DNA of 64,000 nt, from sequence record PV654397.1; one strand, given 5' to 3'. Positions 221-54,191 of this stretch are shown piece by piece. The position numbers and the translations under genes are program-made. The stretch's first letter is position 1, and each line of letters starts with the position of its first letter. A model generated the notes under the pieces. That model did no database searches and had not been told where the DNA came from. It worked only from the letters and a program-made list of their open reading frames with translations.

Positions 221-248
221 ATTATAGCACCAAATTCAAAAGTGTCTC
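221..248 (-). promoter_or_regulatory. sigma70-like promoter with non-canonical -35 (GAGACA-N16-TATAAT, extended -10 GGTGCTATAAT)
   Basis: Minus strand reads GAGACA cttttgaatttggtgc TATAAT; same architecture as 4928-4955 and 54164-54191. Confidence 0.6.
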
Positions 249-304
249 ACTATTATGATAAAAAAATTATAAAAAGTACATAATTCTTGAACATTGAAGT
301 AACG

Positions 305-312
305 CATAAATA
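305..312 (+). promoter_or_regulatory. T4-type late promoter (CATAAATA)
   Basis: One mismatch to T4 TATAAATA, about 30 bp upstream of the endonuclease VII gene; gp55 is encoded in the window. Confidence 0.55.
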
Positions 313-342
313 TTTTGATAAGAATTAGTTTAGTGGGGATTT

Positions 343-834
343 ATGAAGAAAAGATTAAAAGATAGTAAAGAAGCTGCAAACTATCGAAATGAATTACTAA
401 AGAAGCAAAAAGGAATTGATCCTATAATTAAGGAACCAATTACTAAGCCAGTACTTGATCACTATCACTTCGAGAATCAACACTGTCGTGAAGTTCTCCA
501 GAACGAAGTGAACGCATGGGAAGGTAAAGTACAGAACAGCTTTAATCGCTATATGAAGCACTTAACCGATAAACCCTTATACGAGGTACTACGAAATCTT
601 GCGGATTATCTGGAGCGTAATAACAGCATTCCTGAAGATGAGCAAGTTATACATCACACTGCACTAACAATCGATACGAATAAGTTTAAAAGGCTCCCAG
701 CAGGACAACAGAATGCAATACTGGAAGAGTTAGGTGTTATCCCTGGTGCAAACAATGCTGCTCGTGTTAAGCAAGCCAGAAAGCTTATCAAGGAAGGCAA
801 ATTAAATATGGTAGATGTAAAAAAAGGGAGCTAA
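343..834 (+). CDS. 49: Recombination/packaging endonuclease VII (T4 gp49-like Holliday junction resolvase)
   Basis: Colinear with T4 EndoVII: VLDHYH (HLDHDH), VNAWEGK..SFNR (CNAAEGQ..KFNR), LRNLADYLE (LENLLTYLK), IHH, KFKRL; catalytic D/H/N/E kept, Zn cysteines absent. Confidence 0.8.
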   Translation: MKKRLKDSKEAANYRNELLKKQKGIDPIIKEPITKPVLDHYHFENQHCREVLQNEVNAWEGKVQNSFNRYMKHLTDKPLYEVLRNLADYLERNNSIPEDEQVIHHTALTIDTNKFKRLPAGQQNAILEELGVIPGANNAARVKQARKLIKEGKLNMVDVKKGS

Positions 835-850
835 GGCTCCCTTTCCTTTT
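821..850. terminator. Bidirectional intrinsic terminator
   Basis: GGGAGC-TAAG-GCTCCC with A-tract before and T-tract after, between convergent genes. Confidence 0.85.
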
Positions 851-852
851 AA

Positions 853-3000
853 TTAGAATACATCATCAAGAGTTGTATACTCAACAGTACTGAAACCATC
901 CTCTTTAACTACTTTTAGGATTTTCTCAGTCTTAGAAAGCAATTCTTCTCTGTGAGAAATGGCATATACATTCTTACCACGCACAGCAGCCATATCTTGG
1001 AAGATAGACCACACGCGAAGAACACCACTTGAATCAAGACCTTGGTCAATCATCTCATCAATGATAAGAATATTGATACTTTGATACAATGACTCATATG
1101 TATCACGGAAAGCACAAGATAAAGCAATGTTTACCCTTGTACGCTCACCACGACTAAGCTGTTTATAGTCAAAGTACTGACCACTTTTCTCAATTTCTAC
1201 ACTCAAATCATTCAAGAACACAACATTATGTTCAGAACCACACATATCAATGTAATATTGAAGACGTGTATTCAGATACGAAATGTTTTGTTCAATAATA
1301 CGCTTACGGACATAAGAATCCTTGTTTAACAACAATTTAACCAAGAAATCTTGGTGATTTGCCATCTTATCAAGGTTATTATAGTCACTATAGTCTATTG
1401 GTACTAATGAATCGGTCGTAAGTGTATTAATTTGTCCAATAAATGTGTTAGTAGTTTTCAATTCACGATCTAATTGCTGCGATAATGAAGTTACTGTCAT
1501 TTCTAACTCTTTTACTTCAGATTTATTCAATGTATCTGGTACTTCTTGAAGAACATGTGCGTTCAGTTCTTCATATGATGACATAAGTTCATTAGCATAG
1601 ATGTTAATTTGCTCTTCTTCACTCTTTTTAATAAGTTCTTGAAGCTTATGCTCATGCATTTGTGCTTCAGTTAGTGTAGAATAGAATGTCACAGGCTTAG
1701 GTGGCATATCAAAAATCTCAATACTATCAATTTCCTGAAGTATTGTTTCAATTTCAGAAGCGGAACTATCAATTTTCGATTGAAGTTCATTAATAGTATT
1801 TTGAATTTTATCTTTAATAGACGAAGTATGTTCATTATGTTCTAATTCGGACATACAAAGTGGACATTTACTACTCTCCACTGTTGCTAATTTGTCCACC
1901 TCAGCACGTAACGAACTCTCATGACCATTTAAAGCCACCTTTAATGCGTTAAGTTTTTGTTCTTTGAAACGTTTTTGGTTATTATTCTCTTTTAGAATAC
2001 CCTCCAACTGTTTCCATATCTCCAACTCATTGTGATTTTCTAATTCAGTACTGATATCAATAGTTTTTAGCTTATCAATACTTACATTTAATGCTAATTT
2101 TGCTGTTGCTAGTTCACGGTCATATGCATCATACTTCAAAGCTAACTCTTGCACACGTCTTTCTATTTGATCACGAGCAGCATTATGAATAAGAGCTTTC
2201 TCTTTCACTTCTGCCAAATCATAGAGATCGTTGAAGTCTAAAGTTTTGTAGATATTCAATTCTTCAGTCAACTTAGATACTCTATTATTTTTATCAATCT
2301 CAAATTGGTTAGCTTGTTCTTGTAATGATTCAATACTTTTTTGAATACGTTCATTACTTGCAGCCACAGTTTCATTTTTGAACTTTTCTTGTTCAGCTAA
2401 ACGTTTAGAATCTTTATACATATCCTTTAATAGTTCAGCTTTCTCTGTTAATTGTGTGATACCCAGAAGTTCCTCAATCATATCACGTTGTTTCTGTGAT
2501 GATAATGCAAGAAACGGCTCTACGTTAGCATTAAGTACTACAATATGTTCAAATAGTAGTTGAGAAATCCCAAGAATCTCGTTTAGATCTTCTTGTGTAT
2601 CTTTCTTCTCCCCTCTTGACTCATCTTCGACCTTATTATCTTTACCTAATGTAATAAAGTTGAAATACGTGGGACTTCTCCCACGCTCGACGAGATATTG
2701 TACACCATCTTTCTCGAATTCAACAGATACTTCACAGTTTTTAGCATTAGTTTTATTAACTAAGTTTGGAATTTTGATATCGTTACCAATACTTTTACCA
2801 AACAAACCAAAAACTAAACCTTGAATGATGGCACTTTTACCAACACCATTACGGCGACCGGAACTATCACCACCTTCAATAACTGCATCATTGTTTTGAC
2901 CAAGAACTAACGATATATCAGCACCAGACAAATCAATTACTTGTGGTGCATTGCCAAATGAAAAGAAGTTCCTCATTGATATACGTGTAATGTTTAGCAC
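853..3000 (-). CDS. 46: Rad50/SbcC-like recombination ATPase (T4 gp46-like)
   Basis: Walker A NGVGKS, long coiled coil, CPLC zinc hook, LSRGE signature, LIIDE Walker B; GTG start. Confidence 0.93.
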   Translation of the reverse strand: MLNITRISMRNFFSFGNAPQVIDLSGADISLVLGQNNDAVIEGGDSSGRRNGVGKSAIIQGLVFGLFGKSIGNDIKIPNLVNKTNAKNCEVSVEFEKDGVQYLVERGRSPTYFNFITLGKDNKVEDESRGEKKDTQEDLNEILGISQLLFEHIVVLNANVEPFLALSSQKQRDMIEELLGITQLTEKAELLKDMYKDSKRLAEQEKFKNETVAASNERIQKSIESLQEQANQFEIDKNNRVSKLTEELNIYKTLDFNDLYDLAEVKEKALIHNAARDQIERRVQELALKYDAYDRELATAKLALNVSIDKLKTIDISTELENHNELEIWKQLEGILKENNNQKRFKEQKLNALKVALNGHESSLRAEVDKLATVESSKCPLCMSELEHNEHTSSIKDKIQNTINELQSKIDSSASEIETILQEIDSIEIFDMPPKPVTFYSTLTEAQMHEHKLQELIKKSEEEQINIYANELMSSYEELNAHVLQEVPDTLNKSEVKELEMTVTSLSQQLDRELKTTNTFIGQINTLTTDSLVPIDYSDYNNLDKMANHQDFLVKLLLNKDSYVRKRIIEQNISYLNTRLQYYIDMCGSEHNVVFLNDLSVEIEKSGQYFDYKQLSRGERTRVNIALSCAFRDTYESLYQSINILIIDEMIDQGLDSSGVLRVWSIFQDMAAVRGKNVYAISHREELLSKTEKILKVVKEDGFSTVEYTTLDDVF

Positions 3001-3012
3001 AATAAATTTCCC

Positions 3013-4044
3013 TTATAGTGATCTGTAAATTTGGATTAGAAGATTTTTATCGAACATAGGTGAATCAATTTCCATGATTTGTTGTAACACAATCTCATCA
3101 ACTGACTCAGTACTTTCAAAGCTTTCACCATCTTCAATAAGTTCTTTGATACTTTGCTTGCTAGTAACAACGTTAAACTCACGAATGTTATAAAGTTTAG
3201 TAAAAGTATCACGAATAAAACTAATCTCATCAGTAGTGATAGCAATATCAACTTGAACCTTTGAAATAGTATTGTCTTGAAGATAGTAACTTGGATCTGT
3301 TAATAGTTCTGAAAGTGTAAATGTTCTATATTTTGGTGCTTCTGACCAAGAATGGAAAGTTGGTTCTTTACCATGTTCTAAAATCATCACACCTCTTGCA
3401 TCATCCCATGTATCAGAAAAGTTATGTGGGAAACAGTTACCTGTGTAAATTACACGAGTTCCTTTAGATGTTGTTTTTGCTTGTCTCTTGTGGAAATGCC
3501 CACTAAAAACATACTCACAACCACCAAAAGAACCTTCAGTCTCTTTACCATGATCTGGCATCTCAACCATTTTATTGAGCAAGTATCCAGGTAACTCTAA
3601 GTGACCAAAAACATACTTACTTTTAAGTTGAGGTAGAACTTTGTATTCATCTTCAATCATAAATGGAATGAAAGTACAATCATCAAATGTTGTGATTTCA
3701 TTAATGAACTCGATGTTCTCATAAACTTGTGCCATATTAATACTAGTAATGTCACGTTTATTTTTATGATACATGTCATGGTTCCCAACTAAGAAGTAAA
3801 CCTTATCAAAGTTGTCATTTAGTAATTGTAGAATTTGTAAACCATAGTTTAATGTTTGAATGTTAATATTACTGCGGTTATGGAAGTAATCTCCCATAAA
3901 CACGCATACAGTAATACCATTTTTCTTAGCAAGTTCAATCATAAACTTGATGAAGTTCAAACAATCTTCGTTGTGCTGCTTGCTGTTATTCTTTAATCCT
4001 AAATGAATATCAGTAAATGTAATTGCTTTATCAAATAGAGCCAT
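3013..4044 (-). CDS. 47: Mre11/SbcD-like nuclease (T4 gp47-like)
   Basis: DIHLG, GDYFH, GNHD, GHFH metallophosphoesterase motifs; start set at ATG 4044 after AAGGA SD; adjacent to gp46. Confidence 0.92.
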   Translation of the reverse strand: MALFDKAITFTDIHLGLKNNSKQHNEDCLNFIKFMIELAKKNGITVCVFMGDYFHNRSNINIQTLNYGLQILQLLNDNFDKVYFLVGNHDMYHKNKRDITSINMAQVYENIEFINEITTFDDCTFIPFMIEDEYKVLPQLKSKYVFGHLELPGYLLNKMVEMPDHGKETEGSFGGCEYVFSGHFHKRQAKTTSKGTRVIYTGNCFPHNFSDTWDDARGVMILEHGKEPTFHSWSEAPKYRTFTLSELLTDPSYYLQDNTISKVQVDIAITTDEISFIRDTFTKLYNIREFNVVTSKQSIKELIEDGESFESTESVDEIVLQQIMEIDSPMFDKNLLIQIYRSL

Positions 4045-4870
4045 CTTCGTTTTTCCTTTCAATCATGTTCATTTCAATTTCGATTTGACGAGTGTGTGAT
4101 GGTGTAAAACCATGCATCTCAAGTAAATCGTCTCGGATGTTACGAACATTTTTCTCACTATTAAGAATCGAACGGAAACTATTGTTAACGAACGAAGTAT
4201 AGTAAGAGAAAGGATTCAACTGTACTGCTGGTTTATCTTTTTTGTAAAGAATACTCTCTTTAAAGAGAAGTGCGTTTTTAACTAATTGTATTCTGGCATC
4301 ACCCATCATTTCATCCAAATATGTATAGTTTCTATAGTTGGATTTGTGTGAGATTTCCTCTGCCAGTTTAATGAACATTTTACCTAGTTCATTAGTGATT
4401 TTACCATGAACAGTACTGAATTCTCCGTCTTCAAGATCACCTTTCCAGTGAGAACGAACGACTTCGTACAGAATACCTTCTTCATCTACAATGTAATGTT
4501 TGAATGGTTCAAAATTAACTCTTGTATCTGCTGGGATATGTTCATCGGTAATTACACGAATAACCACCTCATCGATAGGTACATCAGTCAGTACTAAATT
4601 GTGCTCATCTGCGTATTCCTTCGCTTTCTTCGCACTCATACCTTCTTTTTCACGAATTGCATCAAGCATTTCATTGTTGAGACGTTTAATACGTGCTGCT
4701 TTAGCTTTATCTAAAAGTTCTGCTGTAATTTCGGATTCATCAAAAACGATATAATCGTACATACTGTAGCACTTATCAAGTAACCAGCAATATGAGATTT
4801 TACTTTTTTGTATCTCACGAAGTAAATCAGCATTGTTAAGATACTTTTTACGCTTCGGCCTATTTGTCAT
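4031..4870 (-). CDS. 55: Late-transcription sigma factor (T4 gp55-like) with a large insertion
   Basis: KYLNNADLLREI (YVNNKELLQAI), ELGKMFIKLAEEISHKSNYRNYT ([23 protein letters not shown]), EMMGDA, NPFSYYT..NNSF; T4 synteny 55-47-46; start ATG 4870 after GGAG. Confidence 0.85.
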   Translation of the reverse strand: MTNRPKRKKYLNNADLLREIQKSKISYCWLLDKCYSMYDYIVFDESEITAELLDKAKAARIKRLNNEMLDAIREKEGMSAKKAKEYADEHNLVLTDVPIDEVVIRVITDEHIPADTRVNFEPFKHYIVDEEGILYEVVRSHWKGDLEDGEFSTVHGKITNELGKMFIKLAEEISHKSNYRNYTYLDEMMGDARIQLVKNALLFKESILYKKDKPAVQLNPFSYYTSFVNNSFRSILNSEKNVRNIRDDLLEMHGFTPSHTRQIEIEMNMIERKNEDGSI

Positions 4871-4927
4871 TATTTCAACTCTCCATGTTTTAAATCCAAT
4901 AGGTACATTCCTTGTACCATCAATGTT

Positions 4928-4955
4928 ATTATAGCACCAAAAACGTCTTTGTCCC
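4928..4955 (-). promoter_or_regulatory. Promoter of the gp55-47-46 operon (GGGACA-N16-TATAAT)
   Basis: Minus strand GGGACA aagacgtttttggtgc TATAAT, about 58 bp upstream of the gp55 start. Confidence 0.65.
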
Positions 4956-4958
4956 ACG

Positions 4959-4966
4959 TATAAATA
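4959..4966 (+). promoter_or_regulatory. T4-type late promoter TATAAATA for the baseplate operon
   Basis: Exact T4 late consensus about 35 bp upstream of ATG 5002. Confidence 0.75.
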
Positions 4967-5001
4967 CATCAAATGTTCCCTTCTTATGGAGAATCAAAAA
5001 G

Positions 5002-5733
5002 ATGATTGATCGTAGAATCCGATTAAGACCTAAAACCGCAGGTGCTAACTATGTGTATGGTGATTTTGGCAACAGTTCAGAACCAACATTGCTATCGTTT
5101 CTGCGTCCAACAAATGGTTTGGTTTGGACTGTAACCCCAACTGTAACTGAACAAAGGTCGGTTCAATATGAAACACAGTCCCCTATACATACTAACAGTA
5201 ACTACAACAACTACAAGAATACAACAAACACAATTTTCACTATCCAAGGTGAGTTTTATGCAAACACTGCTGCTGAAGCAATGTATGCATTGGCTTGTGT
5301 TCATTTTATTCGTTCCGTGTCCTTAATGGACTTTGGTCGTCAAGCAGCATCTGCTAATAATCCCGAACTAGCAATTGCAGGTGCACCACCGCCAATTTTA
5401 CTATTAAGTGGGTATGGTCGTTATACATATAATGATATTCCTGTTATTTTGAAAGCATATAATTTTACATATCCAAATGATGTTTCTTACATTCAGGTTC
5501 CATTGAATAGTAGTGATAGTACTTTTAATTTATCTGATATGGATAGTCGTAAATTCTTCGAACAGCTTAGAAGTACTGGATATATGAATCCACAAGATGA
5601 GGTATGGGTTCCACAGAAAATATCGGTAACACTTCAACTTGAAGAACAACCAACATCTGATTACATGACTAAAAAGTTCAACCTAAATGCATTTAAGCGT
5701 GGTGAACTATTACGTAATGGAGGATTTATCTAA
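5002..5733 (+). CDS. Baseplate tube-fold protein (gp48/gp54/CIS-tube-like)
   Basis: GAPPPILLLSGYG..NDIPVIL..YNFTYP resembles CIS tube proteins; first gene of the baseplate operon; start reassigned to ATG 5002 after GGAG. Confidence 0.5.
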   Translation: MIDRRIRLRPKTAGANYVYGDFGNSSEPTLLSFLRPTNGLVWTVTPTVTEQRSVQYETQSPIHTNSNYNNYKNTTNTIFTIQGEFYANTAAEAMYALACVHFIRSVSLMDFGRQAASANNPELAIAGAPPPILLLSGYGRYTYNDIPVILKAYNFTYPNDVSYIQVPLNSSDSTFNLSDMDSRKFFEQLRSTGYMNPQDEVWVPQKISVTLQLEEQPTSDYMTKKFNLNAFKRGELLRNGGFI

Positions 5734-6047
5734 TGTCCAATTATAGTCAATACTCTCCTTATGCAAAGGTTAAACAAACGTGGTATCTTGGTTACAATTT
5801 ACCACGTGATATGGTTCCTGCTGATACTGACGACTTCTATGTAATTCCATTGAAGTATGAGCATCAACCTTGGCGTTTAGCATACGAAATGTATGGTAAT
5901 GAACGTCTGTATTATGTATTTGCCCTATTGAATCCTGATATATTAGGAGAAGACCCAATATACAATTTTAATAGTGGTATCACAATTCGTGTTCCCTCAA
6001 ATCAACGAGTGCAAAACTATTTGAACGGTACTCGTAACATAGGTTAA
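5733..6047 (+). CDS. LysM-like baseplate wedge protein (gp53/tail X-like)
   Basis: YVIP..Y...PWRLAYEMYGNERLYYVFALLNP..DPIYNF..GITIRVP; stop/start overlap with the previous gene. Confidence 0.7.
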   Translation: MSNYSQYSPYAKVKQTWYLGYNLPRDMVPADTDDFYVIPLKYEHQPWRLAYEMYGNERLYYVFALLNPDILGEDPIYNFNSGITIRVPSNQRVQNYLNGTRNIG

Positions 6048-18500: not shown

Positions 18501-21500
18501 GATTTGGTCCCAAGTGGTTTGTGGGATATTGATGGTACTATCGGTGACAGCAGCACTGGTACTATTTTGTCCGGTGAACGCCGTGGTCAATATGACAAAT
18601 ACAAGCGTTTCGGTGTACAGCCATTTAAAATCACTAAGACTGGCGAGAAAACCAGTACTGGTATTGATATTTGTGAAGTTGAATATATTGCACCTGAAGT
18701 TTTAGGTCTTGTTAGTGGTAATTTAGATCATCGTGCAGAACCGTGGGCTTATGGTGATATGGGTGACATGGAATTCACTTACATGAACACTGCGATGTTT
18801 GCTTATGACCAAATGCTTCTTCTATACAAAGCAAAACCAGCACAGTTTGCAAACTATTACTGGGATACCCGTAATGATAACCTTAAACCAGTTTATACTG
18901 ATGGTTCACAGTTCCTTTATGGTGAAACTCGTAAGCGTCTAAACTTTGACAGTACTACATTAGTACATGGTGAGAAAAATACCCGTACTATCGGTTATCA
19001 AATGTTTGTTAGTGACTATTTGATGTATCAGAATAAGAACATTACCACCAAATACGGTGACGTTGTTCGTTCTTCTTATGTTAATGTCGCTCACAAAATT
19101 GGTGGCTTTACTAAAGCAGACCAATTGACATTCACTGCTAAATCTTTCGGTTTGATTTCACAAGAAAACCAAACTATCGGTCTAGTTCGTTCCAATAACA
19201 TTCGCGATGAGCAAATGAGTGCAGTAAAAATTACTTGGAATGGTAGTGCATATCAAATTGATGGTTATGATTTAGTTGGTGCTAAATTTAAGTATAAAAT
19301 TCCAGTTAAAAATGGAAGAAAAGTAACTCTTAAATTGGAAGACAGAACTGTTGTTCATTACAATGAATGGAAATCTGAAGGTACATTAGAATATGGTAAA
19401 ATATTCAATACATACCAAGAAGTTTATACTTTCATTTGTGGATATGGTGAATATCTAAAAGAACATGGCTGGATTTTTGAAGATGTAAATGATAGTGGTG
19501 CTCAACAAGACTGGACAACTATTGCTAAAGACTTTGTTATTTGGAGTCAGAATAATTTAAGTACTGGTGAGTTCATCTCCTGTACTCCAAGTGCAGCTAA
19601 TGCTAAATTTGGTGCAGATTTTGGTTCAGTTCAATCTGTTACACAGAACAGTGGTGGTGTTTGGTCACTACTCGATGATGAAAACCAAGGTATCCGTCAA
19701 TATGAAATCGAAACTTCGCGTATCGGTAACGTATTCACAGTGAGAACTACATCTGAATCACAAAAACGTATGGCGTTGATTCGTTTGAGCCTAAGTTCAT
19801 ATGAACACGCAGTTGTTTTTGATGATAAAACTATCTTTGGTGATTACATTTACCAACCAACTTATGGTGCTATTCAAGAATTGATTAAAATGTATGGTTA
19901 CATTACTGGGTCATGGACTGGTCGCCTACAAGCACCTGGTTTCATTATCCTAGAAGCAGGAACTTTACCATCATTTGAAAAATTAGTAACTGATTTTGAA
20001 TTATATTATAATAGTGAAACTCCTGTTAGTGATGTTCAGCTTCAAGAGTTATCAAATCACTTGATTGGCTATCAAACTCGTGATTATCTACAACGTATGA
20101 TTAGTAGTGATGTTAGTCGTGTTGATTTCTATAAAGGATTCATTCATGACAAAGGTACTAACCAAGTAATGGAAAAAGTACTACGCGTTTCTAAATCTTA
20201 CGACACTGATGAATATAAAGCACTACAGGAATGGGCATTTAAGATTGGTACTTATGGTAATATCAATGGTAAGAAAAATCTACAATTTAAACTAATCAAT
20301 GACCAATTTAAACAACAACCACAGATGGTTTCATTTGATGTTAATGCTACATCAAATGGTACTGGTAATGGTATTGTTTATTACGGTGAACAAGGGGTTG
20401 ACTCACGCTGGATTACTCGTCCAAATGGTAAGTTTTCATTCCCAATGCGTAGTGGAAGAAGTGAGAATATCCAACTTCCAGACATTGGTCCTGTAACACT
20501 AGATGAAATTTCATACGTTACTAAAGATTTCAGTACTGCATATAATGATCGTATCAATTATATGAATAACAGTGGTGAAATACCAGATTCTGTATGGATG
20601 TTTAAAGATGGTAATGATTTGTGGAATATTTTCGAACTAGTAGACACTGAAGTTGAGATGCTCTCTATCGTTCCAATTGAAAATACCGATGTATATGCAG
20701 AACAATTCTGTAAAGTAACTCTAAGTGATGATATCCCACTAAATGATGGTGATTATTATTACTTTGTTGATGAAACTAACTTTATGCCAGATACATTGAC
20801 TATAGAAAGTCAATATTATACTGCGGGTAATGACCCTAGAGTTATGGTAGTTCCGTTTGACACTTCAATCACTATTGACTTCACTGATCCTGATACTCGC
20901 CCACGCTTGTATCGTTATGTTTCACGATTCAGTACTGAAGAGATGCGTCAGGAATACATTGACAGAAAATATAGTTTTAAAGCTCCACAAAGTACTTTGT
21001 TTGACCGCCCAACCACATATGATGAGCGTACTAACATTACTGCGTTGTACCTAAACGTGTTTGACCCAATCAACGGTGTTATTCCTGGTGCAGCGATGCA
21101 GAACGTTACCTACACATCTCCAGTTGACCCAGCACAATACAACAGCAATGGTGAATTGATTCAAGCATGGGGTGCTGATAAAGTTGGTCAGGTTTGGTGG
21201 AACACCAGCACTGCTTTCTACTTAGATTACACTCGTGCAATCTATGATGCTGATGGTAATGTGGATGTTGATGCAACAAATGAATATAAACGTTATAACT
21301 GGGGCAGATTGCTACCGCACAGTACTGTTGATGTTCTTGAATGGGTATGTTCACCAGTTGAACCATATAACTGGGACAAATACTGCAAAGACGTTGCTAA
21401 CAAAAATAAAAACAACACTATGTACCTACCAAGCGGAACCGCATTGGAAGATAATTATAGTACGTTCTTAGAATATGATAGCACAACTGATACTTATGTT

Positions 21501-25545: not shown

Positions 25546-25578
25546 AAAAAGGAGAGCATTTGCTCTCCTTTTCTTTTT
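25546..25578. terminator. Bidirectional intrinsic terminator
   Basis: AAAAA-GGAGAGC-ATTT-GCTCTCC-TTTT between convergent genes. Confidence 0.85.
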
Positions 25579-27866
25579 TACGCAATAACTTTTTCTACTG
25601 CTTTAGTTCGTTTAGGTTTGATAGCCAATTTACCATCAATCACATCAAACGTTACGTTACCACCATTAACCAGAGAACCACACAACATCTCTTTAGCTAG
25701 TGGGACACGGATGTTTTGCTCAATAGTGCGTTTCATTGGACGTGCACCCATCCCAACTTTAACACCATTTGTTGCCAACCACTCACGTGCCGCTTTGGTC
25801 AGTGAAACTTTAACTTTGCGGTCTTTGATTTGTTCATTCAAACTTCCCATGAACTTATCAATGATGCTGTCAATCGCTTCGCTGCTTAGGTCTTTGAATG
25901 TCACAATACTATCGATACGGTTGATGAATTCAGGTGGCAAGAATGCTTTAATCGCTTTATCTTGTGCTGTATCACTACCGCTCATCCCAATACTACGCTT
26001 GGTTGAATCTGCTGCACCAAGGTTAGTTGTCATAATAACAGTTACGTTATTGAAGTAAACAGTTTTACCTTGTGAACCAGTCAAACGTCCTTCGTCCAGA
26101 ACCTGTAGGAAGGTTAGTAGTACTTTACGATCAGCTTTTTCGATTTCATCAAGCAACAGTACTGCATTCGGGAACTGCTCAATCTTGTCGAGTAGCAGAC
26201 CGTTACCGGAATCGTGACCAACATAGCCTGGAGGTGAACCAATCAGTTTAGCAACAGTATGTTCCTGTGAAAACTCGGACATATCGAAACGAATCAGTTC
26301 AGAGCCAGTTGCATCAGCCAGTGCTTTGGTAATTTCAGTTTTACCAGTACCAGATGGCCCAACAAACATGAATGCACCTTGAACACTTGATTTATCACGC
26401 AGACCAGCACGAGCTACCATCACGTTATCAACCAGTTTCTGTACTGCTTCTTCTTGACCGTATACACGAGAACGTAGTGCATCTGGTAGATTACGCATAC
26501 GTTCACTTTCAGTGCAAGCAACCACGTTAATATCTAGGTTTGCGATACCTGCAACAACTTCTTGAATCAGTGCAACAGTGATGATGTTATCATCAGTTTC
26601 ACGAGAACGTACTTTCGCTGCCGCCGCATCCATTAGGTCGATTGCTTTGTCAGGGAAGTGTTTGTTCTTCAGGAACTTATCACTTAGTGTAATAACTGCA
26701 TCCATTGCTTCAGTACTGAACTCTACGTTATGGAAAGTTTCATAAGTAGATTTCAAACCATTCACAATCGCACGGGTTTCATCAATTGTTGGCTCAACTA
26801 CATCAATTTTCATGAAACGGCGAGTTAGTGCACTATCTTTTTCGATGTTTTTACGATATTCATCGTAAGTTGTTGCACCGATTACACGAATCTCACCACG
26901 AGATAGTGCAGGTTTGAGCATGTTGCTCATATCCATAGAACCGTTGCTTGCTGAACCAGCACCAACCATAATATGGATTTCATCGATGAACACAATAGTG
27001 TTTTCACGTTTCTTCAGTTCTTTGAGTAGGTTATCGATACGTTCTTCGAACTCACCACGGTACTTAGTACCAGCAGTCAGTGCACCTACGTTCAGAGACA
27101 GAATTTCAACATCTTTAAGATGCTCTGGTACTTCACCATCAGCGATTGCCTGTGCTAGACCGTCAATGATTTGAGTTTTACCAACACCAGCTTCACCAGT
27201 CAGGATGGCATTCTTCTTAGTCTTACGGGCCAGAGTTTCAATCAGTGCAGAAAGCTCTTTCTGGCGACCAATCATTGGGTCAAGTTTACCTTCTTTTGCA
27301 AGTGCGGTTAGGTTAGTGGTGTAATCTTCTAAACCTTTTTGTTTGGACGATGGTTGCTGTTGTGCCACTTTTTTCTCCCCAGTTGGCTCATCACTAATGC
27401 TTTGAAGGTTGATTCCGTTGTCGATTGCTTCTACGTGCTTCTGTAGAGTTCGTGCTGCTTCAGTACAAGTGATACCCTCTTCACGCAATGCTGCTTCTAG
27501 TGCAGTATTTGGGAAGGACAAACACTCAAACAGTACAAAATAAGCATCAATTGAGAAATCATCACGTTTAAGTTGCTCAATTACTGATTTCTTAGAAAGT
27601 TCCTGAACTACACGGTTCACAAGAAGTGATGTGCGGTTCGCTTCATCACCATCAGCACTTTTAGGTGCATGTGGGAATGTTGTATTTTTCAGATATGCAA
27701 TCAAACGACCGTGTAGGTTGTCTGCATCGATGTTCATATCTTCAAATACTGCTTTGATGCTATCGATTGTCAGTACTGTAGCACTTAGATGGTCAATAGT
27801 CAAGAAGGTATGACCCAGAGAAGTTGCCAGTTCGTCGCTTTTTTTGAATAATTGGGTAAGATTCAT
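25578..27866 (-). CDS. clpA: ClpA-type ATP-dependent unfoldase
   Basis: Clp N-domain GHTFLTIDHL; two AAA modules (GEAGVGKT/FIDEIH and GPSGTGKT/LLDEIEKA); no ClpB middle domain; KRSIGM loop at the ClpP-docking position; start ATG 27866 after AGGAG. Confidence 0.9.
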   Translation of the reverse strand: MNLTQLFKKSDELATSLGHTFLTIDHLSATVLTIDSIKAVFEDMNIDADNLHGRLIAYLKNTTFPHAPKSADGDEANRTSLLVNRVVQELSKKSVIEQLKRDDFSIDAYFVLFECLSFPNTALEAALREEGITCTEAARTLQKHVEAIDNGINLQSISDEPTGEKKVAQQQPSSKQKGLEDYTTNLTALAKEGKLDPMIGRQKELSALIETLARKTKKNAILTGEAGVGKTQIIDGLAQAIADGEVPEHLKDVEILSLNVGALTAGTKYRGEFEERIDNLLKELKKRENTIVFIDEIHIMVGAGSASNGSMDMSNMLKPALSRGEIRVIGATTYDEYRKNIEKDSALTRRFMKIDVVEPTIDETRAIVNGLKSTYETFHNVEFSTEAMDAVITLSDKFLKNKHFPDKAIDLMDAAAAKVRSRETDDNIITVALIQEVVAGIANLDINVVACTESERMRNLPDALRSRVYGQEEAVQKLVDNVMVARAGLRDKSSVQGAFMFVGPSGTGKTEITKALADATGSELIRFDMSEFSQEHTVAKLIGSPPGYVGHDSGNGLLLDKIEQFPNAVLLLDEIEKADRKVLLTFLQVLDEGRLTGSQGKTVYFNNVTVIMTTNLGAADSTKRSIGMSGSDTAQDKAIKAFLPPEFINRIDSIVTFKDLSSEAIDSIIDKFMGSLNEQIKDRKVKVSLTKAAREWLATNGVKVGMGARPMKRTIEQNIRVPLAKEMLCGSLVNGGNVTFDVIDGKLAIKPKRTKAVEKVIA

Positions 27867-27904: not shown

Positions 27905-27932
27905 ATTATATCACATTCTTTGCGTTTGTCAA
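27905..27932 (-). promoter_or_regulatory. Consensus sigma70 early promoter for clpA
   Basis: TTGACA aacgcaaagaatgtga TATAAT (16-bp spacer, TGn extension). Confidence 0.85.
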
Positions 27933-48779: not shown

Positions 48780-48845
48780 TAATTATAATAAAAAAAACGG
48801 TGTCATCAATTATGGTGACACCATCTTAACAAGTGAGGTAGTTAT

Positions 48846-49625
48846 ATGTTTACATATGTAAAAGGTAGTTCTAAAGAAAATTATGAATTGGGTAACATCA
48901 TCTCCAACCCAGTTGGTGTTAAGGGTTTAAAAGAACGCCCTGGGGCAACTCCAGATGATGAACAAACATATCGTTATTTGTACAGTGATATTCGTGCACT
49001 TTATGGTATTTCAAGTAAAGATGGTTCTGAAATTGAACCTAATAACGCTGTTCGCAAAGAAGAGGGTTTCTGGTGGTTGGAATATAAGAATGTTGGTAAT
49101 GTGAACGCAATTAATGAGAATTTGGAATATATTAAACTACAAGATAGTAATCAACCAGTCATCACATTCTTAGAAGAAGCAGAAGGTGAATATAAAGAGT
49201 TAACAGTACTGAAAACTTATAATTATGTTGATATGGACATTGCAGCAGTTAAATCTGATCTGAAAGCACGCACAGTATCATCTCGTAGTGATCGTATTAA
49301 TGCTGGTTATATGTTTAACGGTCATCGTTATAGTACTGATCTAGCTGGTCGTCAAATGCTTCTTAATTATTATACACAAGTAACTTCCGGTTCTGATAGC
49401 GTTTCGATTTTCCTTGATGACGCAATTGTAAAACTATCTGCTGCTGAAATGACTCAACTATACACTGAAGCATTTGCTATGGTTGAATCCCTATTTGCAG
49501 AGTGTAATAAGCAATGTGCTGACATTGATGCAGTTCCTGATGCTGATGAAGATGCAATTTATAAAGCACAACAGGCGGCTGTATGGGTATATGAAGGTAT
49601 TGATATTCCTGAGCGTACTCGTTAA
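48846..49625 (+). CDS. Tail fibre assembly chaperone-like protein (DUF4376-like C-terminus)
   Basis: RSDRINAGYMFNGHRYSTDLAGRQML and downstream helices; directly after the fibres. Confidence 0.6.
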   Translation: MFTYVKGSSKENYELGNIISNPVGVKGLKERPGATPDDEQTYRYLYSDIRALYGISSKDGSEIEPNNAVRKEEGFWWLEYKNVGNVNAINENLEYIKLQDSNQPVITFLEEAEGEYKELTVLKTYNYVDMDIAAVKSDLKARTVSSRSDRINAGYMFNGHRYSTDLAGRQMLLNYYTQVTSGSDSVSIFLDDAIVKLSAAEMTQLYTEAFAMVESLFAECNKQCADIDAVPDADEDAIYKAQQAAVWVYEGIDIPERTR

Positions 49626-49639
49626 TTTATATTTTTTTT

Positions 49640-49669
49640 AAAGGTCAACTATGGTTGGCCTTTTCTTTT
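49640..49669 (+). terminator. Intrinsic terminator
   Basis: AAAGGTCAAC-TATG-GTTGGCCTTT then TCTTTT. Confidence 0.8.
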
Positions 49670-49717
49670 ATCTAAAATAAATACTTAATATATAATCTAT
49701 TCTGAGGAAATATTTAA

Positions 49718-51682: not shown

Positions 51683-51683
51683 T

Positions 51684-51714
51684 AAAAAAGGGAGACATAA
51701 GTCTCCCTTTTCTT
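51684..51714. terminator. Bidirectional intrinsic terminator
   Basis: AAAAAA-GGGAGAC-ATAA-GTCTCCC-TTTT between convergent genes. Confidence 0.88.
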
Positions 51715-52644
51715 TTATACAGCCATTGGTGCTTTGATTGTTGGCATTGGATCGTAATTAACTAATTTGAAAGAATCCATAGTGAAATCTTCAATATCAG
51801 TAATAGTAGGATCTAGCCATAATTCTGGTAATGTACGTGGTTCACGTTGGAGTTGCTCTTTTACTTGTTCAATATGGTTTTGATAGATATGGCAGTCGCC
51901 ACCATTCCAAATAAATTCACCAACATCTAACCCTGTAATTTGTGCAATCATATGAGTTAGTAGTGAGTAACTACTAATATTAAATGGTACACCAAGGAAT
52001 AGATCAGCACTACGTTGATGAAGAATACAACTTAGTTTACCCTGTACAACACAAAACTGCACAAAGCTATGACAGGGTGGCAAAGTCATAGCATCAAGCT
52101 CACCAACGTTCCATGCACTTAGAATGTGACGACGACCGTATGGATCAGTATTGATACCTTCAATAACTTGTTTTAGCTGGTCAGTTACACGACGCATAAT
52201 AACACCATGTGAACCAGTATAATCAATAACTTTATACCCTTTATCTTTTAGTTCTTGAATTTCTTCAGTACTGGAACTGAATTTATAATCTTCCCATTCA
52301 CGCCATTGTTTACCATAAACTGGGCCAAGCTCACCATCAGAATACCCAAGGCTTACACCTTGATTAAGGTAGTTGTCTGTCCAAATTGTTTTCTTTTCTA
52401 CATCACGTGTCCCGTGTAAAATTTCACACAGACGACGCTCATCGTGAGAACCTTCAATAAACCATAACAATTCTGAAGTCATTGCTTTCCAAGCCAAACG
52501 TTTAGTAGTTACTGCTGGGAAACCTTCTTTTAGGTCAAAACGCATTTGTTGTCCGATTAGCTTGATAGTGCCAACACCAGTACGATCAACGCTTTCGACA
52601 CCTTGATCCAGAATTCTTTGATATAGTTCTTGTAGTTGTTTCAT
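51715..52644 (-). CDS. thyA: Thymidylate synthase
   Basis: DRTGVGT, FPAVTTK, LGPVYGKQWR, RRHILSAWN, LPPCH, QRSADLFLGVPFN, GDCHIY; no intron. Confidence 0.97.
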   Translation of the reverse strand: MKQLQELYQRILDQGVESVDRTGVGTIKLIGQQMRFDLKEGFPAVTTKRLAWKAMTSELLWFIEGSHDERRLCEILHGTRDVEKKTIWTDNYLNQGVSLGYSDGELGPVYGKQWREWEDYKFSSSTEEIQELKDKGYKVIDYTGSHGVIMRRVTDQLKQVIEGINTDPYGRRHILSAWNVGELDAMTLPPCHSFVQFCVVQGKLSCILHQRSADLFLGVPFNISSYSLLTHMIAQITGLDVGEFIWNGGDCHIYQNHIEQVKEQLQREPRTLPELWLDPTITDIEDFTMDSFKLVNYDPMPTIKAPMAV

Positions 52645-53237
52645 TTTACGTCCTTGAAAAATGTAATAAAGTGTTCCATGTGTTTTTGTGTAGCATTACG
52701 TGAACCAATCCCAGTCCAGTTACCGTGTGGTGCTGGTATTGAGAATGTTTCAGTAAACTCTTTCAGTACTGTATCATAATAAAATACAGAGCGAGTGTTC
52801 ATATCATAACAATATATTTCTGGATTGTCAACTGAATCCATATACATCTGTACGGCCCATGCAGTTCCACCTGAAACTTGCGTAGGTGATGTAATATTTG
52901 CAATACAATATACTCTTTTTGTATTAAGTATCTGATAACTATTCCTTGCAAGTAAGTTATATACATACGAACCAGGCTTAGGAACTTTACGGCGTAAAGA
53001 GTAACATGCAATGTTTAATTGTTTTAATATTGAACTATCACAAAGGATATTGGGTGGAATTTCTAATATAGTATTTTCATCTACGCTGCTTTGGTGACCC
53101 TTGAATGAAAAATTTATTACTTCAAATCCATTGTCTTTTGCATAGATAGAAAAAAGGCGGTCAGCACCTGCTGCCCCGCCACTGAAACATACATTAGATA
53201 AACCATTGATTGCTTCATCTAATTCTATTTTATTCAT
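52641..53237 (-). CDS. SLOG (SMF/DprA-LOG/YpsA)-fold protein, putative nucleotide-binding
   Basis: VCFSGGAAGAD, LLARN, SGGTAWAV motifs; ATGA overlap with thyA. Confidence 0.55.
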   Translation of the reverse strand: MNKIELDEAINGLSNVCFSGGAAGADRLFSIYAKDNGFEVINFSFKGHQSSVDENTILEIPPNILCDSSILKQLNIACYSLRRKVPKPGSYVYNLLARNSYQILNTKRVYCIANITSPTQVSGGTAWAVQMYMDSVDNPEIYCYDMNTRSVFYYDTVLKEFTETFSIPAPHGNWTGIGSRNATQKHMEHFITFFKDVK

Positions 53238-53242
53238 TTATA

Positions 53243-53896
53243 TTATTTTGCTTTACGTTCTGCAAATGCCTGTTTAACTTTCTCAATTGCTTTGGTTTGT
53301 GAAATTCCTTCTGGGATTTCAATATAGAAAGTTTTGCTATCAGGTGCTACAGGTGTTGCTTGAACTTGTGGACGTAGAGATGGTTCTAAGTTGTAAGCAC
53401 GTTCAAAGTGCTCTTTAGCCAACTGCTCATAACGTTGTGCATCTTTAAGTAGTTGCTCAACAATGGTAGCTTCTTCAACAGAAGTATCAACTTCTTGTGG
53501 CTTGAATGGGTTGTATTCTTTAACTTTACCATCTTCATGTTTTTTAGCATCATTATCATTGATTGCGTTGTTTAGAACATCAAGAGAAATCTTACTGTTT
53601 CCACCAACATGCATATCAATATCACAAGTACGTGCACGACGCAAATGTTGTAGATTATGAAGAACATCTAGCATTTTGCGACCGTCTAGATGACCAATCT
53701 TATGCATAACTTCCCACAAATCTACATTCGATTGACCTTGATTCATTACTAAATCTGCAACAGATTGAGCATATGCTTCAGGAAGTGAATCGCGATAAAC
53801 AATGAGACAATGTTCTGGATCATCAGGGAGTGAACGCCATACCACAAATACTCGTGAACCCGTATTACGTACTACACCAACGTGACGAATAGCCAT
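53243..53896 (-). CDS. Hypothetical protein
   Basis: 217-aa ORF with SD (AGGAG), tightly packed in the thyA operon. Confidence 0.7.
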   Translation of the reverse strand: MAIRHVGVVRNTGSRVFVVWRSLPDDPEHCLIVYRDSLPEAYAQSVADLVMNQGQSNVDLWEVMHKIGHLDGRKMLDVLHNLQHLRRARTCDIDMHVGGNSKISLDVLNNAINDNDAKKHEDGKVKEYNPFKPQEVDTSVEEATIVEQLLKDAQRYEQLAKEHFERAYNLEPSLRPQVQATPVAPDSKTFYIEIPEGISQTKAIEKVKQAFAERKAK

Positions 53897-53898
53897 TA

Positions 53899-54129
53899 TT
53901 ATTCTCCTTTATTTTGTTCAGCAGCAGCTTGTGCAGCATCAGCTTCTTCTTGTGCTTTGATATCTTCGAGTGCAGAGTTGGCAAACTCAACAAACTTAGA
54001 TACGACTGGAGCAACATCAACAAGTTCTTCGACTTTAAATGAATTACGAGCCACAGCAGCTTCCATGATTTTAGCAGCGTTGATTAGGTCGATTAGTGTT
54101 AGTTGAATTTTTTCTGGTTCTTGTTCCAT
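53899..54129 (-). CDS. Small hypothetical protein (76 aa)
   Basis: Start reassigned to ATG 54129 after GGAG; first gene after the promoter at 54164-54191. Confidence 0.65.
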   Translation of the reverse strand: MEQEPEKIQLTLIDLINAAKIMEAAVARNSFKVEELVDVAPVVSKFVEFANSALEDIKAQEEADAAQAAAEQNKGE

Positions 54130-54163
54130 TTTAATACTCTCCATGTATGTTGTTACAAATATA

Positions 54164-54191
54164 ATTATATCACCTTTTTCCAAGCTGTCCC
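54164..54191 (-). promoter_or_regulatory. Promoter of the thyA operon (GGGACA-N16-TATAAT)
   Basis: GGGACA gcttggaaaaaggtga TATAAT. Confidence 0.65.

What the first reader, a model, noticed from the sequence alone, without database searches (positions are those of the whole stretch)
221..54191. A second promoter class, G(G/A)GACA-N16-TATAAT: candidate middle promoters
Three minus-strand promoters (221-248, 4928-4955, 54164-54191) share GGTGnTATAAT, an exact 16-bp spacer, and GGGACA or GAGACA in place of TTGACA. Two of them drive gp55-47-46 and the thyA operon; gp55/47/46 are middle-mode genes in T4. The clpA and MoxR promoters have the same 16-bp geometry but canonical TTGACA and ATGTGw before the -10. 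This suggests an activator- or anti-sigma-dependent middle class distinct from the MotA box.
Basis: partly seen in the sequence, partly recalled or inferred. Interest (0 to 1): 0.7.

Follow-up and report, generated by a model that had tools for sequence, protein, structure and literature searches.

The report
Phage-specific middle-type promoter class
The three sites are genuine members of a roughly 45-member promoter class (tGRGACA, 16 bp, TGnTATAAT) that this jumbo E. coli phage places before its DNA-replication genes, its late sigma factor gene and a family of unannotated structured RNAs. A sister version of the class had already been predicted in related phages, and which factor reads it is still untested.

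Summary
The window is Escherichia phage WPEC5 (381 kb, Rak2-like jumbo myophage), positions 186001-250000.

**Observation: confirmed.** All three sites are at the stated coordinates, against 0.04 expected in the window. The whole genome holds 13 exact G[GA]GACA-N16-TATAAT sites, all on the coding strand, against 0.09 expected. A weight matrix finds about 45 sites with the consensus A-rich-tGRGACA-N11-rTGnTATAATg.

**What the sites serve.** They precede genes for topoisomerase, primase, DNA polymerase, UvsX, NrdD, ThyA and gp55. They never precede virion genes, which carry ATAAATA.

**The true early class lies outside the window.** It sits in the terminal repeat, with the consensus AAAAGTAC-TTGCAA/TTGACA-N16-TATAAT-gTTTTACATC.

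**Conservation.** Promoter elements are conserved in relatives while the spacers drift. The -35 element changes by phage clade: GRGACA, GRAACG or GAACAA. A host sigma70 that I take to be invariant across these hosts cannot explain that.

**Mechanism.**
- No MotA/AsiA homologue and no MotA box were found.
- The most likely reader is the phage's own RpoD-like sigma (about 0.45).
- The rivals are host sigma70 acting through the extended -10 alone, or sigma70 helped by an unknown activator.

**Novelty.** The class matches "Promoter 1" predicted by MEME in phages CBB and GAP32, so this is a new member of a known kind.

**By-product.** Site 1 drives no protein gene. It drives one of four paralogous, roughly 500-nt structured RNAs with strong covariation and no Rfam match. 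The family is present in 72 related phage records.

The parts
221..248 (-). Class-M promoter 1: -35-like GAGACA (243-248), extended -10 TG (228-229), -10 TATAAT (221-226). Predicted start is near 214. It drives non-coding RNA copy A.
   Evidence: The hexamers are conserved in G17 (121Q clade) while 5 of 16 spacer bases differ. No ORF lies downstream.
1..214 (-). The 5' 214 nt of structured non-coding RNA copy A. It continues leftwards out of the window to about record position 185708 and is about 507 nt long.
   Evidence: About 97% identical overall to G17, with the transcribed part nearly invariant in the pairwise alignment, against about 85% for flanking DNA. There are four paralogues in the genome. 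Covariation is shown. No Rfam match.
4928..4955 (-). Class-M promoter 2: GGGACA (4950-4955), TG (4935-4936), TATAAT (4928-4933). Predicted start is near 4921. It drives gp55-gp47-gp46.
   Evidence: The orthologous promoter is conserved in 121Q and SE_PL (TGGGACA), pEa44 (TGGAACG) and RaK2 (TGAATA).
4031..4870 (-). gp55-like late sigma factor gene (279 aa). The true start is most likely ATG 4870, with GGAG upstream, not the annotated 4969.
   Evidence: tblastn hits to gp55 of T4-like cyanophages. 121Q and G17 annotate the 840-nt version.
853..4044 (-). gp47-like (3013-4044, Metallophos domain) and gp46-like (853-2976, AAA_23/SMC domains) recombination nuclease genes, co-transcribed with gp55.
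   Evidence: Pfam and record annotation.
54164..54191 (-). Class-M promoter 3: GGGACA (54186-54191), TG (54171-54172), TATAAT (54164-54169). Predicted start is near 54157. It drives a four-gene operon ending in thyA.
   Evidence: Conserved in G17 with 5 spacer changes.
54205..54226 (-). Intrinsic terminator hairpin plus T-run immediately upstream of promoter 3. It isolates the thyA operon from the MoxR/VWA operon.
   Evidence: G17 annotates a terminator at the same place.
51715..54129 (-). thyA operon: a 76-aa ORF (53899-54129), two ORFs without Pfam hits (53243-53896 and 52641-53237), and ThyA (51715-52644). A terminator lies at 51684-51713.
   Evidence: Pfam Thymidylat_synt, E = 3.6e-101. 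Terminator.
27905..27932 (-). TT variant of the same architecture (TTGACA-N16, aTGTGaTATAAT) before the ClpA/ClpB-like AAA+ gene (25578-27866).
57224..57343 (-). Two tandem TT variants (57224-57251 and 57316-57343) before the MoxR-like ATPase (55724-57052) and the VWA/DUF2201 gene (54239-55648).
   Evidence: Both are conserved in G17 with diverged spacers.
4959..4966 (+). Late promoter TATAAATA for the divergent baseplate gene (5002-5733). It lies 3 bp from the -35 element of the gp55 promoter on the other strand.
   Evidence: Its complement TATTTAT is invariant in all seven phages aligned.

Best explanation
These are real promoters of a phage-specific class, here called class M. Its consensus is an A-rich upstream tract, tGRGACA, a spacer that puts the hexamer exactly 16 bp from the -10, and an obligatory extended -10, rTGnTATAATg.

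About 45 copies head the replication, recombination and nucleotide-metabolism operons, the gene for the late sigma gp55, and four structured non-coding RNA genes.

Proposed cascade:
1. Host sigma70 holoenzyme fires the early promoters in the terminal repeat.
2. It also fires a consensus TTGACA/TGnTATAAT promoter at record 77799-77826, which heads the operon containing the phage's RpoD-like sigma (WPEC5_CDS0184).
3. That phage sigma joins host core RNA polymerase and reads class M. Its divergent region-4.2 helix specifies GRGACA instead of TTGACA.
4. Class M then produces gp55, which turns on the ATAAATA late promoters.

Shown here: the motif, its non-randomness, its placement, its conservation and its clade-specific -35 element. 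Inferred: which protein reads it, and the timing.
For: **Motif statistics**
- 13 exact sites against 0.09 expected, all on the coding strand.
- The weight matrix gives 47 minus-strand and 0 plus-strand hits.
- A selection that ignores the -35 region (all 80 minus-strand TGnTATAAT sites) still yields G, G/A, G, A, C, A at the 16-bp position. G is 38/80 at the first position against a 19% background.
- G-R at the first two positions has P = 1.5e-8, while TT is the minority.

**Placement**
- Sites lie 14-165 nt before the topo II, dda, exonuclease, primase, uvsX, DNA polymerase, gp55, thyA and nrdD operons.
- Site 3 sits just after a terminator.
- Early and late ATAAATA classes are distinct and serve other gene sets.

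**Footprinting**
- Hexamers are conserved and spacers diverge at five promoters compared between WPEC5 and 121Q/G17.

**Clade-specific -35 element at orthologous promoters**
- GRGACA in Asteriusvirus and SE_PL.
- GRAAC(G/A) in CBB, pEa44, BF, Yen9-04 and GAP32.
- GAAC(A/G)A in RaK2.
- From established knowledge, not tested here: the enterobacterial hosts share the same sigma70 region 4.2.

**The phage sigma**
- It has regions 2 and 3 and an RpoD-like C-terminus.
- Its putative recognition helix is RSSLHRKY in WPEC5, RSSIHRKY in 121Q and RTSLHRCY in SE_PL. It is KATLSRRY in BF and RGTLHYKF in RaK2, which parallels the -35 variants.
- In my own alignment to sigma70 (sigma70 residues recalled from memory, helix taken), the counterpart of R584, which contacts the conserved C of GACA, is kept. 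The counterparts of E585, R588 and Q589, which contact the upstream part of the hexamer, are changed. This fits a change confined to the first two bases.

**Other points**
- No AsiA, MotA or MotA box was found.
- A 2026 review still calls the role of such sigmas 'likely' and undefined.
Against: - A perfect TGnTATAAT is by itself a strong sigma70 promoter in E. coli and needs no -35 contact (established knowledge). Host holoenzyme may therefore fire these sites without any phage factor.
- In the phage sigma, the residues aligned with the sigma70 TG-contacting H455 and E458 are Y and V. Those aligned with the -10-melting W433 and W434 are T and T (alignments). It is therefore not obvious that this sigma reads TGnTATAAT at all.
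- The helix/-35 correlation rests on only three clades. Any phage protein differs between clades.
- The Pfam region-4 model does not match the C-terminus.
- No expression data exist for this phage group.
Confidence: 0.45

Rival explanations
1. Host sigma70 alone. These are ordinary extended -10 promoters whose -35 hexamer keeps GACA (4 of 6). They fire from the start of infection at moderate strength, without any phage factor, and 'middle' is only a label from gene content.
For: - The TG at -15/-14 is nearly invariant and the -10 is a perfect TATAAT.
- TTGACA variants with the same module exist: clpA, MoxR and the sigma operon.
- The tool's sigma70 scan scores the sites 10 of 12.
- The phage sigma lacks the sigma70 TG-contact residues.
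- PA5oct, a distant relative, depends on host RNA polymerase.
Against: - Sigma70 prefers TT at the first two positions, yet G-R is selected (14 of 25 against 10% expected, P = 1.5e-8).
- The element changes with phage clade (GRGACA, GRAACG, GAACAA) at orthologous promoters, while host sigma70 region 4.2 does not change (established knowledge).
- Mere avoidance of TT would give random bases, not a consensus.
Confidence: 0.22
2. Sigma appropriation, T4-style but with unrelated proteins. Host sigma70 reads TGnTATAAT. An unidentified phage anti-sigma disables -35 recognition, shutting off the TGn-less early promoters. An unidentified phage DNA-binding activator reads tGRGACA.
For: - The split is the one AsiA exploits in T4 (established knowledge): the early class depends on the -35 element and has no TGn, while class M always has TGn.
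- A clade-specific element implies a phage-encoded reader.
- Most of the 749 genes have no assigned function.
Against: - No AsiA or MotA homologue was found by tblastn (best E = 0.43).
- No candidate activator was identified.
- The phage already encodes a full-length RpoD-like sigma that has no other obvious promoter class to read. The early class looks host-type and the late class looks gp55-type.
Confidence: 0.2
3. Chance or compositional artefact: the matches are not promoters.
For: The genome is AT-rich, so TATAAT-like strings are common.
Against: - 13 sites against 0.09 expected and 3 against 0.04.
- Complete strand bias.
- Placement is intergenic, 14-165 nt before start codons.
- Conservation across clades with diverged spacers.
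Confidence: 0.01

Closest known systems
'Promoter 1' (divergent RpoD-like promoter) predicted by MEME in Pectobacterium phage CBB, also noted in Cronobacter phage GAP32 (Buttimer et al. 2017, PMC5259590; Abbasifar et al. 2014)
   Same: - Same phage family and same geometry: a hexamer 16 bp from TATAAT.
- Same rTGnTATAAT extended -10.
- Same gene set: DNA-synthesis genes and the gp55-like sigma gene (Porf_244).
- The orthologous gp55 promoter aligns base for base.
   Different: - The -35 element is G(A/G)AAC(G/A) there and G(G/A)GACA here.
- It was reported only as a motif, with no reader assigned and no link to clade.
- No paper found on the Asteriusvirus/WPEC5 group reports any promoter.
Phage T4 middle promoters (MotA box at -30 plus a sigma70 -10, with AsiA-remodelled sigma70)
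   Same: - They serve the same kinds of genes: replication, nucleotide metabolism, and genes 55, 46 and 47.
- They keep a sigma70-type -10, often with TGn, and replace the -35 element.
- They sit between a host-type early class and a gp55 late class.
   Different: - There is no (a/t)(a/t)TGCTT(t/c)A box and no AsiA or MotA homologue.
- The upstream element sits at the -35 position, not at -30.
- The phage carries an RpoD-like sigma, which T4 lacks.
Extended -10 (TGn) sigma70 promoters of E. coli
   Same: TG at -15/-14, a consensus -10 and a non-consensus -35 element.
   Different: The -35 region is not degenerate. It has its own consensus with G-R where sigma70 wants T-T, and that consensus shifts with the phage clade.
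Phage-encoded sigma cascades (Bacillus phage SPO1 gp28 then gp33/34; coliphage phiEco32 gp36, PMC8948821)
   Same: An early-expressed phage sigma70-family protein redirects host core RNA polymerase to phage promoters whose consensus differs from the host's.
   Different: Here only the -35 element differs from the host consensus, and the dependence on the phage sigma is inferred, not shown.

Membership tests
Rak2-like jumbo-phage 'Promoter 1' class (CBB/GAP32) | A classic TATAAT -10 preceded by rTGn | tested here: met
   G is 97% at -14, T is 89% at -15 and TATAAT is at least 91% per position in 47 sites. CBB Table S6 shows the same.
Rak2-like jumbo-phage 'Promoter 1' class (CBB/GAP32) | A -35-region element TG(A/G)AAC(G/A) in place of TTGACA, at fixed spacing | tested here: inconclusive
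   The spacing and the T-G-R start are the same, but the core is GACA rather than AACG. GGAACA variants do occur in WPEC5 at record positions 60463, 89800 and 311591. I read this as a clade variant.
Rak2-like jumbo-phage 'Promoter 1' class (CBB/GAP32) | Located before DNA-synthesis genes and the gp55-like gene; orthologous positions | tested here: met
   Catalogue read against the annotation.
T4 MotA/AsiA middle promoter | MotA box (a/t)(a/t)TGCTT(t/c)A centred near -30, 11-13 bp from the -10 | tested here: not met
   0 matches on the coding strand and 5 on the other strand. None of the three sites has one.
T4 MotA/AsiA middle promoter | MotA and AsiA encoded by the phage | tested here: not met
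   tblastn of T4 AsiA and MotA against the whole WPEC5 genome gives a best E of 0.43. Remote analogues are not excluded.
Sigma70 extended -10 promoter | TGn immediately upstream of a good -10, with a weak -35 | tested here: met
Sigma70 extended -10 promoter | Initiation by host sigma70 holoenzyme without other factors | not testable with these tools
   Needs in vitro transcription or reporters in uninfected cells.
Phage-sigma-dependent promoter | The phage encodes a sigma70-family protein with promoter-recognition regions | tested here: met
   WPEC5_CDS0184 has Pfam Sigma70_r2 and r3, and NCBIfam RpoD_Cterm covering 4-220 of 238 positions. PDB matches are to SigA, SigB, RpoS and RpoD.
Phage-sigma-dependent promoter | The promoter consensus co-varies with the sigma's DNA-reading residues | tested here: inconclusive
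   Three helix types go with three -35 types, but that is only three clades. The TG-contact and Trp-dyad residues are not conserved.
Phage-sigma-dependent promoter | Transcription requires the phage sigma | not testable with these tools
   No transcriptome or biochemistry exists for this phage group.
T4-type late promoter (gp55) | TATAAATA/ATAAATA at -10 with no -35 element | tested here: not met
   The three sites have TATAAT. ATAAATA sites form a separate set before virion genes.

The most novel reading that the evidence does not exclude
It would then define a private middle regulon that includes gp55 and a previously unrecognised, family-wide set of 4-5 large structured RNAs per genome. That would give the first defined promoter specificity for a jumbo-phage RpoD-like sigma, a natural specificity-swap series, and a new large non-coding RNA class under its control.
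Probability: 0.4. Interest if true: 0.7.

Novelty: new member of a known kind. Interest (0 to 1): 0.45.

Why it matters
Most jumbo phages lack their own RNA polymerase and are assumed to reprogram the host enzyme with phage sigma factors. A 2026 review still describes this only as 'likely', with no promoter assigned.

A well-delimited promoter class in a phage of laboratory E. coli makes the question directly testable with standard in vitro transcription and reporter assays. The class has about 45 members, heads the gp55 gene, and its -35 element shifts between phage clades.

It also corrects annotation. The gp55 start codon is wrong in the record, and operon boundaries can be redrawn. It further exposed an unannotated, strongly covarying family of roughly 500-nt RNAs present in 72 phage records.

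Tried and rejected
1. **MotA-box reading.** The pattern scan and tblastn with T4 MotA and AsiA, both taken from NC_000866, were negative.
2. **GRGACA and TTGACA in the window as two classes.** Rejected. They fall in one weight matrix and share a -10 module. The distinct early class lies elsewhere.
3. **Exact TATAAATA as the late motif.** Too strict, with only 12 sites. ATAAATA has 54 sites, 29 of them in upstream regions, a 21-fold enrichment.
4. **A protein gene downstream of site 1.** None is credible. No tRNA or tmRNA was found, and no Rfam family matched, even at E up to 5.
5. **Published promoter or transcriptome data for 121Q-like phages.** None found. The RaK2 paper does not mention promoters.
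6. **Supplement of Iyer et al. 2021, for AsiA distribution.** Not held.
7. **My first gene caller.** It picked internal starts. I replaced it and checked key genes against the record annotation.
Considered and set aside. Position -13 is A (74%), not the C that sigmaS favours.
Full report
**Identity of the window.** Megablast places the window at positions 186001-250000 of Escherichia phage WPEC5 (PV654397.1, 381,326 bp) at 100% identity. Relatives at 99% include fEgEco12 and Ecwhy_1. The 121Q/PBECO4/G17 group (Asteriusvirus) is at about 85%. RaK2, GAP32, CBB, Erwinia, Yersinia and Serratia phages are at 60-80%. I fetched the whole WPEC5 record in nine pieces and joined them for genome-wide scans. 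The record has a 21,662-bp direct terminal repeat, and the second copy was excluded from all counts.

**The observation.**
- 221-248: GAGACA-N16-TATAAT
- 4928-4955: GGGACA-N16-TATAAT
- 54164-54191: GGGACA-N16-TATAAT

Each carries GGTGnTATAAT. The window expectation for GRGACA-N16-TATAAT is 0.04, and no shuffle reached 3. Genome-wide there are 13 exact matches, all on the minus strand, which carries about 89% of the genes. Second-order Markov simulations give 0.09. Only two matches occur at spacers of 14, 15, 17 or 18, so the 16-bp spacing is real.

**Extent of the class.**
- Allowing any first dinucleotide and TA[TC]AAT gives 46 nnGACA-N16 sites. They split cleanly into two groups.
- A weight matrix seeded on the non-early group converges on 47 minus-strand and 0 plus-strand hits.
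- Its consensus is (A-rich)-t-G-R-G-A-C-A-N11-r-T-G-n-T-A-T-A-A-T-g.
- To avoid circularity I took all 80 minus-strand TGnTATAAT sites regardless of upstream sequence. The hexamer 16 bp upstream still reads G (38/80), G/A (36+22), G (42), A (48), C (36), A (41), against a G background of 19%.
- Among NNGACA-N13-TGnTA[TC]AAT sites, G-R occupies the first two positions in 14 of 25 (P = 1.5e-8), and TT in 5.

**Where the sites lie (read against the annotation).** Nearly all strong sites are intergenic, 14-165 nt before a start codon. In record coordinates they precede:
- topoisomerase II (126032)
- dda helicase (132754)
- the Cas4-like exonuclease and nrdAB block (143164)
- primase-helicase (149587)
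- the uvsX block (159613, 159690)
- the DNA polymerase block (172459)
- gp55-47-46 (190928)
- the thyA operon (240164)
- nudix/glutaredoxin (259168)
- nrdD (285438)
- DNA methylase (101507)
- many small genes of unknown function

None precedes the major head, portal, sheath, tube or baseplate genes. Site 3 sits 13 bp downstream of an intrinsic terminator at 54226-54205, and the operon ends at another terminator after thyA. Pfam confirms ThyA, the ClpA/B-like AAA+ protein, the gp47 (Metallophos) and gp46 (SMC-like) proteins, and a VWA/DUF2201 partner of the MoxR-like ATPase. tblastn links the 279-aa product of 4031-4870 to gp55 of T4-like cyanophages.

**The other two promoter classes.**
- Early class: 37 sites, 34 of them inside the terminal repeat at 0.9-21.3 kb. 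The consensus is AAAAGTAC-TTG(C/A)AA-N16-TATAAT-gTTTTACATCaAGGGGGA, with no TGn. One site sits before almost every tiny gene there. None is in the window.
- Late class: ATAAATA occurs only 54 times in the genome. Of these, 29 fall in the short regions upstream of genes, a 21-fold enrichment. They are typically 17-58 nt before virion genes on either strand.
- Window late sites on the plus strand: 306, 4960, 10988, 11005, 11966, 15530, 33617 and 49677. On the minus strand: 33582, 61270 and 61792.

The genome therefore has an early class that looks host-type, the class in question, and a gp55-type late class.

The clpA (27905-27932) and MoxR (57224-57251, 57316-57343) promoters have TTGACA. They also have the same 16-bp spacing and the same aTGTGnTATAATg module, and they score as members of the same matrix. 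The promoter heading the operon that contains the phage sigma gene is of this TT/TGn type too (record 77799-77826). These are better seen as variants that a host sigma70 holoenzyme should read very well, not as a separate class.

**Conservation.**
- At the gp55 promoter the -35 element and TGnTATAAT are identical in WPEC5 and 121Q, while four spacer bases differ. SE_PL keeps TGGGACA, Erwinia phage pEa44 has TGGAACG and RaK2 has TGAATA.
- Site 1, site 3 and both MoxR promoters show the same pattern against G17: hexamers kept, about 5 of 16 spacer bases changed.
- In 50 kb of the SE_PL replication region the class reads cTTGGGACAA with 16- or 17-bp spacing. In RaK2 it reads ttTGAAC(A/G)A.

[quoted passage not shown] It lies before DNA-synthesis genes and the gp55-like gene, and was also seen in GAP32. 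Table S6 of that paper lists TG(A/G)AAC(G/A)-N13-rTGnTATAAT, including Porf_244 TGGAACGTTTTTTAAAATTGTGGTATAAT. Read as a hexamer, that is G(A/G)AAC(G/A)-N16-TATAAT, the same geometry as here. The class is therefore known as a motif in sister genera. I found no paper on the Asteriusvirus/WPEC5 group that mentions promoters. A 2026 review says only that such phage sigmas 'likely' direct phage-specific promoters.

**Who reads it?**
- T4 MotA and AsiA, taken from NC_000866, have no significant match in WPEC5. No MotA box followed by a -10 occurs on the coding strand.
- WPEC5_CDS0184 (record 72077-73045) is a sigma70-family protein. It has Pfam regions 2 and 3 and matches the NCBIfam RpoD C-terminal model across 4-220 of 238 positions.
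- It aligns with SigA, SigB, RpoS and RpoD structures through region 4.1 and the first helix of the region-4.2 helix-turn-helix. It then has an eight-residue insertion and a divergent recognition helix.
- In my own alignment to sigma70, made from memory of the E. coli region-4.2 sequence and the helix, the R584 counterpart is kept. The counterparts of E585, R588 and Q589 are S, H and R.
- By established structural genetics of sigma70, R584 reads the C of TTGACA and the other three read the upstream part. This matches a change confined to the first two bases. That step rests on prior knowledge, not on a test here.
- The helix is RSSLHRKY in WPEC5, RSSIHRKY in 121Q and RTSLHRCY in SE_PL, all GRGACA clades. 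It is KATLSRRY in Serratia phage BF (the GRAACG clade) and RGTLHYKF in RaK2 (GAACAA).
- The hosts share one sigma70 region 4.2 (established knowledge), so a clade-specific -35 element needs a phage-encoded reader. The RpoD-like sigma is the only recognisable candidate, and no other promoter class is left for it.

**Evidence against the phage sigma.**
- The residues aligned with the sigma70 TG-contact pair H455/E458 are Y and V.
- Those aligned with the W433/W434 dyad are T and T.
- The correlation covers only three clades.
- A perfect extended -10 is expected to work with host sigma70 unaided.

I therefore put the phage-sigma reading at about 0.45, sigma70 alone at about 0.22, and sigma70 plus an unknown activator or anti-sigma at about 0.2.

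**What site 1 drives.**
- No credible ORF follows it. G17 leaves the 836 bp unannotated.
- The copy is about 97% identical overall between the WPEC5 clade and G17, with the transcribed part nearly invariant in the pairwise alignment. Flanking DNA is about 85% identical, and the region just upstream of the promoter is visibly more diverged.
- BLAST within the genome shows four paralogous loci: record positions about 186214-185708, 72005-71520, 270734-270166 and 320977-320445. They are 69-79% identical to one another.
- Each begins about 7 nt after a class-M promoter: GAGACA, GGGACA with TACAAT, TGGACA and GAGACA.
- A conserved block retrieves copies from IMG/VR contigs whose lengths match 121Q (four copies), Yen9-04, BF and GAP32, among others.
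- Almost every copy is preceded by the clade-typical class-M promoter. That is GRGACA in the contig of 121Q's length, GGAACA/GGAACG/GAAACA with TGGTATAAT in the contigs of BF, Yen9-04 and GAP32 length, and TTGGGACAA in a further group of contigs with SE_PL-type promoters. This is independent comparative support for both the promoter and its clade-specific -35 element.
- blastn finds the element in 72 phage records, typically 4-5 places each. The matches are annotated as nothing, as hypothetical proteins or as a repeat region.
- On 17 sequences, 93.7% of cells in a 114-pair consensus structure are paired, against 39-45% when the partners are slid. 59 pairs have double changes against 15-18 in the slid controls, and 260 compensatory cells against 29-43. 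No shuffle reaches the observed values.
- A single copy folds with z = -2.4. Rfam has no match even at E up to 5.
- Its function is unknown. I report it as a by-product.

**Verdict.**
It is a distinct, conserved, middle-type class that is not MotA-dependent.
- Novelty: new member of a known kind. Interest: moderate, raised somewhat by the clade-specific -35 shift, which makes the role of the jumbo-phage RpoD-like sigma directly testable in a coliphage.

Noticed in passing
window 1-214 (-) continuing into L003 49708-50000; paralogues at L005 21520-22005 (-), L007 20166-20734 (-), L008 20445-20977 (-): A family of four structured non-coding RNAs of about 490-570 nt, each starting about 7 nt after a class-M promoter. 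It is present in 72 Rak2-like phage records, typically 4-5 places each, and is unannotated. Covariation is strong: 59 of 114 pairs show double changes and 93.7% of cells are paired, against about 42% in slid controls. There is no Rfam match and the function is unknown.
   Followed up: partly
window 4959-4966 (+) against 4950-4955 (-): The late promoter TATAAATA of the divergent baseplate gene lies 3 bp from the -35 element of the gp55 promoter on the opposite strand. Its complement TATTTAT is invariant in all seven phages aligned, including Vibrio and Pseudomonas relatives. The two promoters probably cannot be occupied at once, so late transcription might shut off gp55's own promoter.
   Followed up: partly
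L004 887-21297 (terminal repeat), plus L005 4474, 15340 and 19650: Early promoter class of 37 copies: AAAAGTAC-TTG(C/A)AA-N16-TATAAT-gTTTTACATCaAGGGGGA. One sits before nearly every tiny gene of the 21.7-kb terminal repeat. The block downstream of the -10 is conserved and runs into the ribosome-binding site.
   Followed up: partly
window 4870-4969: The WPEC5 and fEgEco12 records start the gp55-like CDS at 4969, which places the promoter inside the gene. 121Q and G17 annotate the 840-nt version starting at the ATG equivalent to 4870, which has a GGAG ribosome-binding site.
   Followed up: yes
window 57052-57223 (-): The roughly 170-nt leader between the tandem TTGACA promoters and the MoxR-like ATPase start is almost invariant against G17. 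It contains a hairpin followed by a T-rich run, which G17 annotates as a terminator, and then a further TATAAT (57093-57121). It could be an attenuator or a short RNA.
   Followed up: no
L005 22077-23045 (-) (WPEC5_CDS0184): The RpoD-like sigma evolves fast. It is 59% identical between WPEC5 and 121Q, whereas gp55 is 95% identical and the DNA about 85%. It is 33-40% identical to the RaK2, SE_PL and BF proteins. A class-M promoter and ncRNA copy B lie directly downstream of it.
   Followed up: partly
L005 37556-37583 and 37738-37765 (-): Class-M-like sites lie just upstream of the tRNA-Ser and tRNA-Met genes (record 87463-87549 and 87230-87305).
   Followed up: no
L004 20550-21383 (-): A strong class-M-type site (TTGGGACG...GGGATATAAT, record 21356-21383) sits at the inner edge of the terminal repeat. 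It is followed by about 800 bp without credible ORFs that is full of short repeats (CAGTACTG, GGATGGCTA/GACGGCTA). The stretch is unrelated to the RNA family. It may be an origin, a packaging element or another RNA.
   Followed up: no
window 53243-53896 (-) and 54239-55648 (-): Record annotations look wrong. The second 'thymidylate synthase' (CDS0409) has no Pfam hit. The 'HNH endonuclease' (CDS0411) is a DUF2201 metallopeptidase/VWA protein, the usual partner of a MoxR ATPase.
   Followed up: partly
window 62968-62995 (-): An intragenic weight-matrix hit (GAGCAG-N16-GTGATATAAT) lies inside the tail-tube gene, 161 nt before the head-completion gene. It may be an internal promoter or a chance match.
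   Followed up: no
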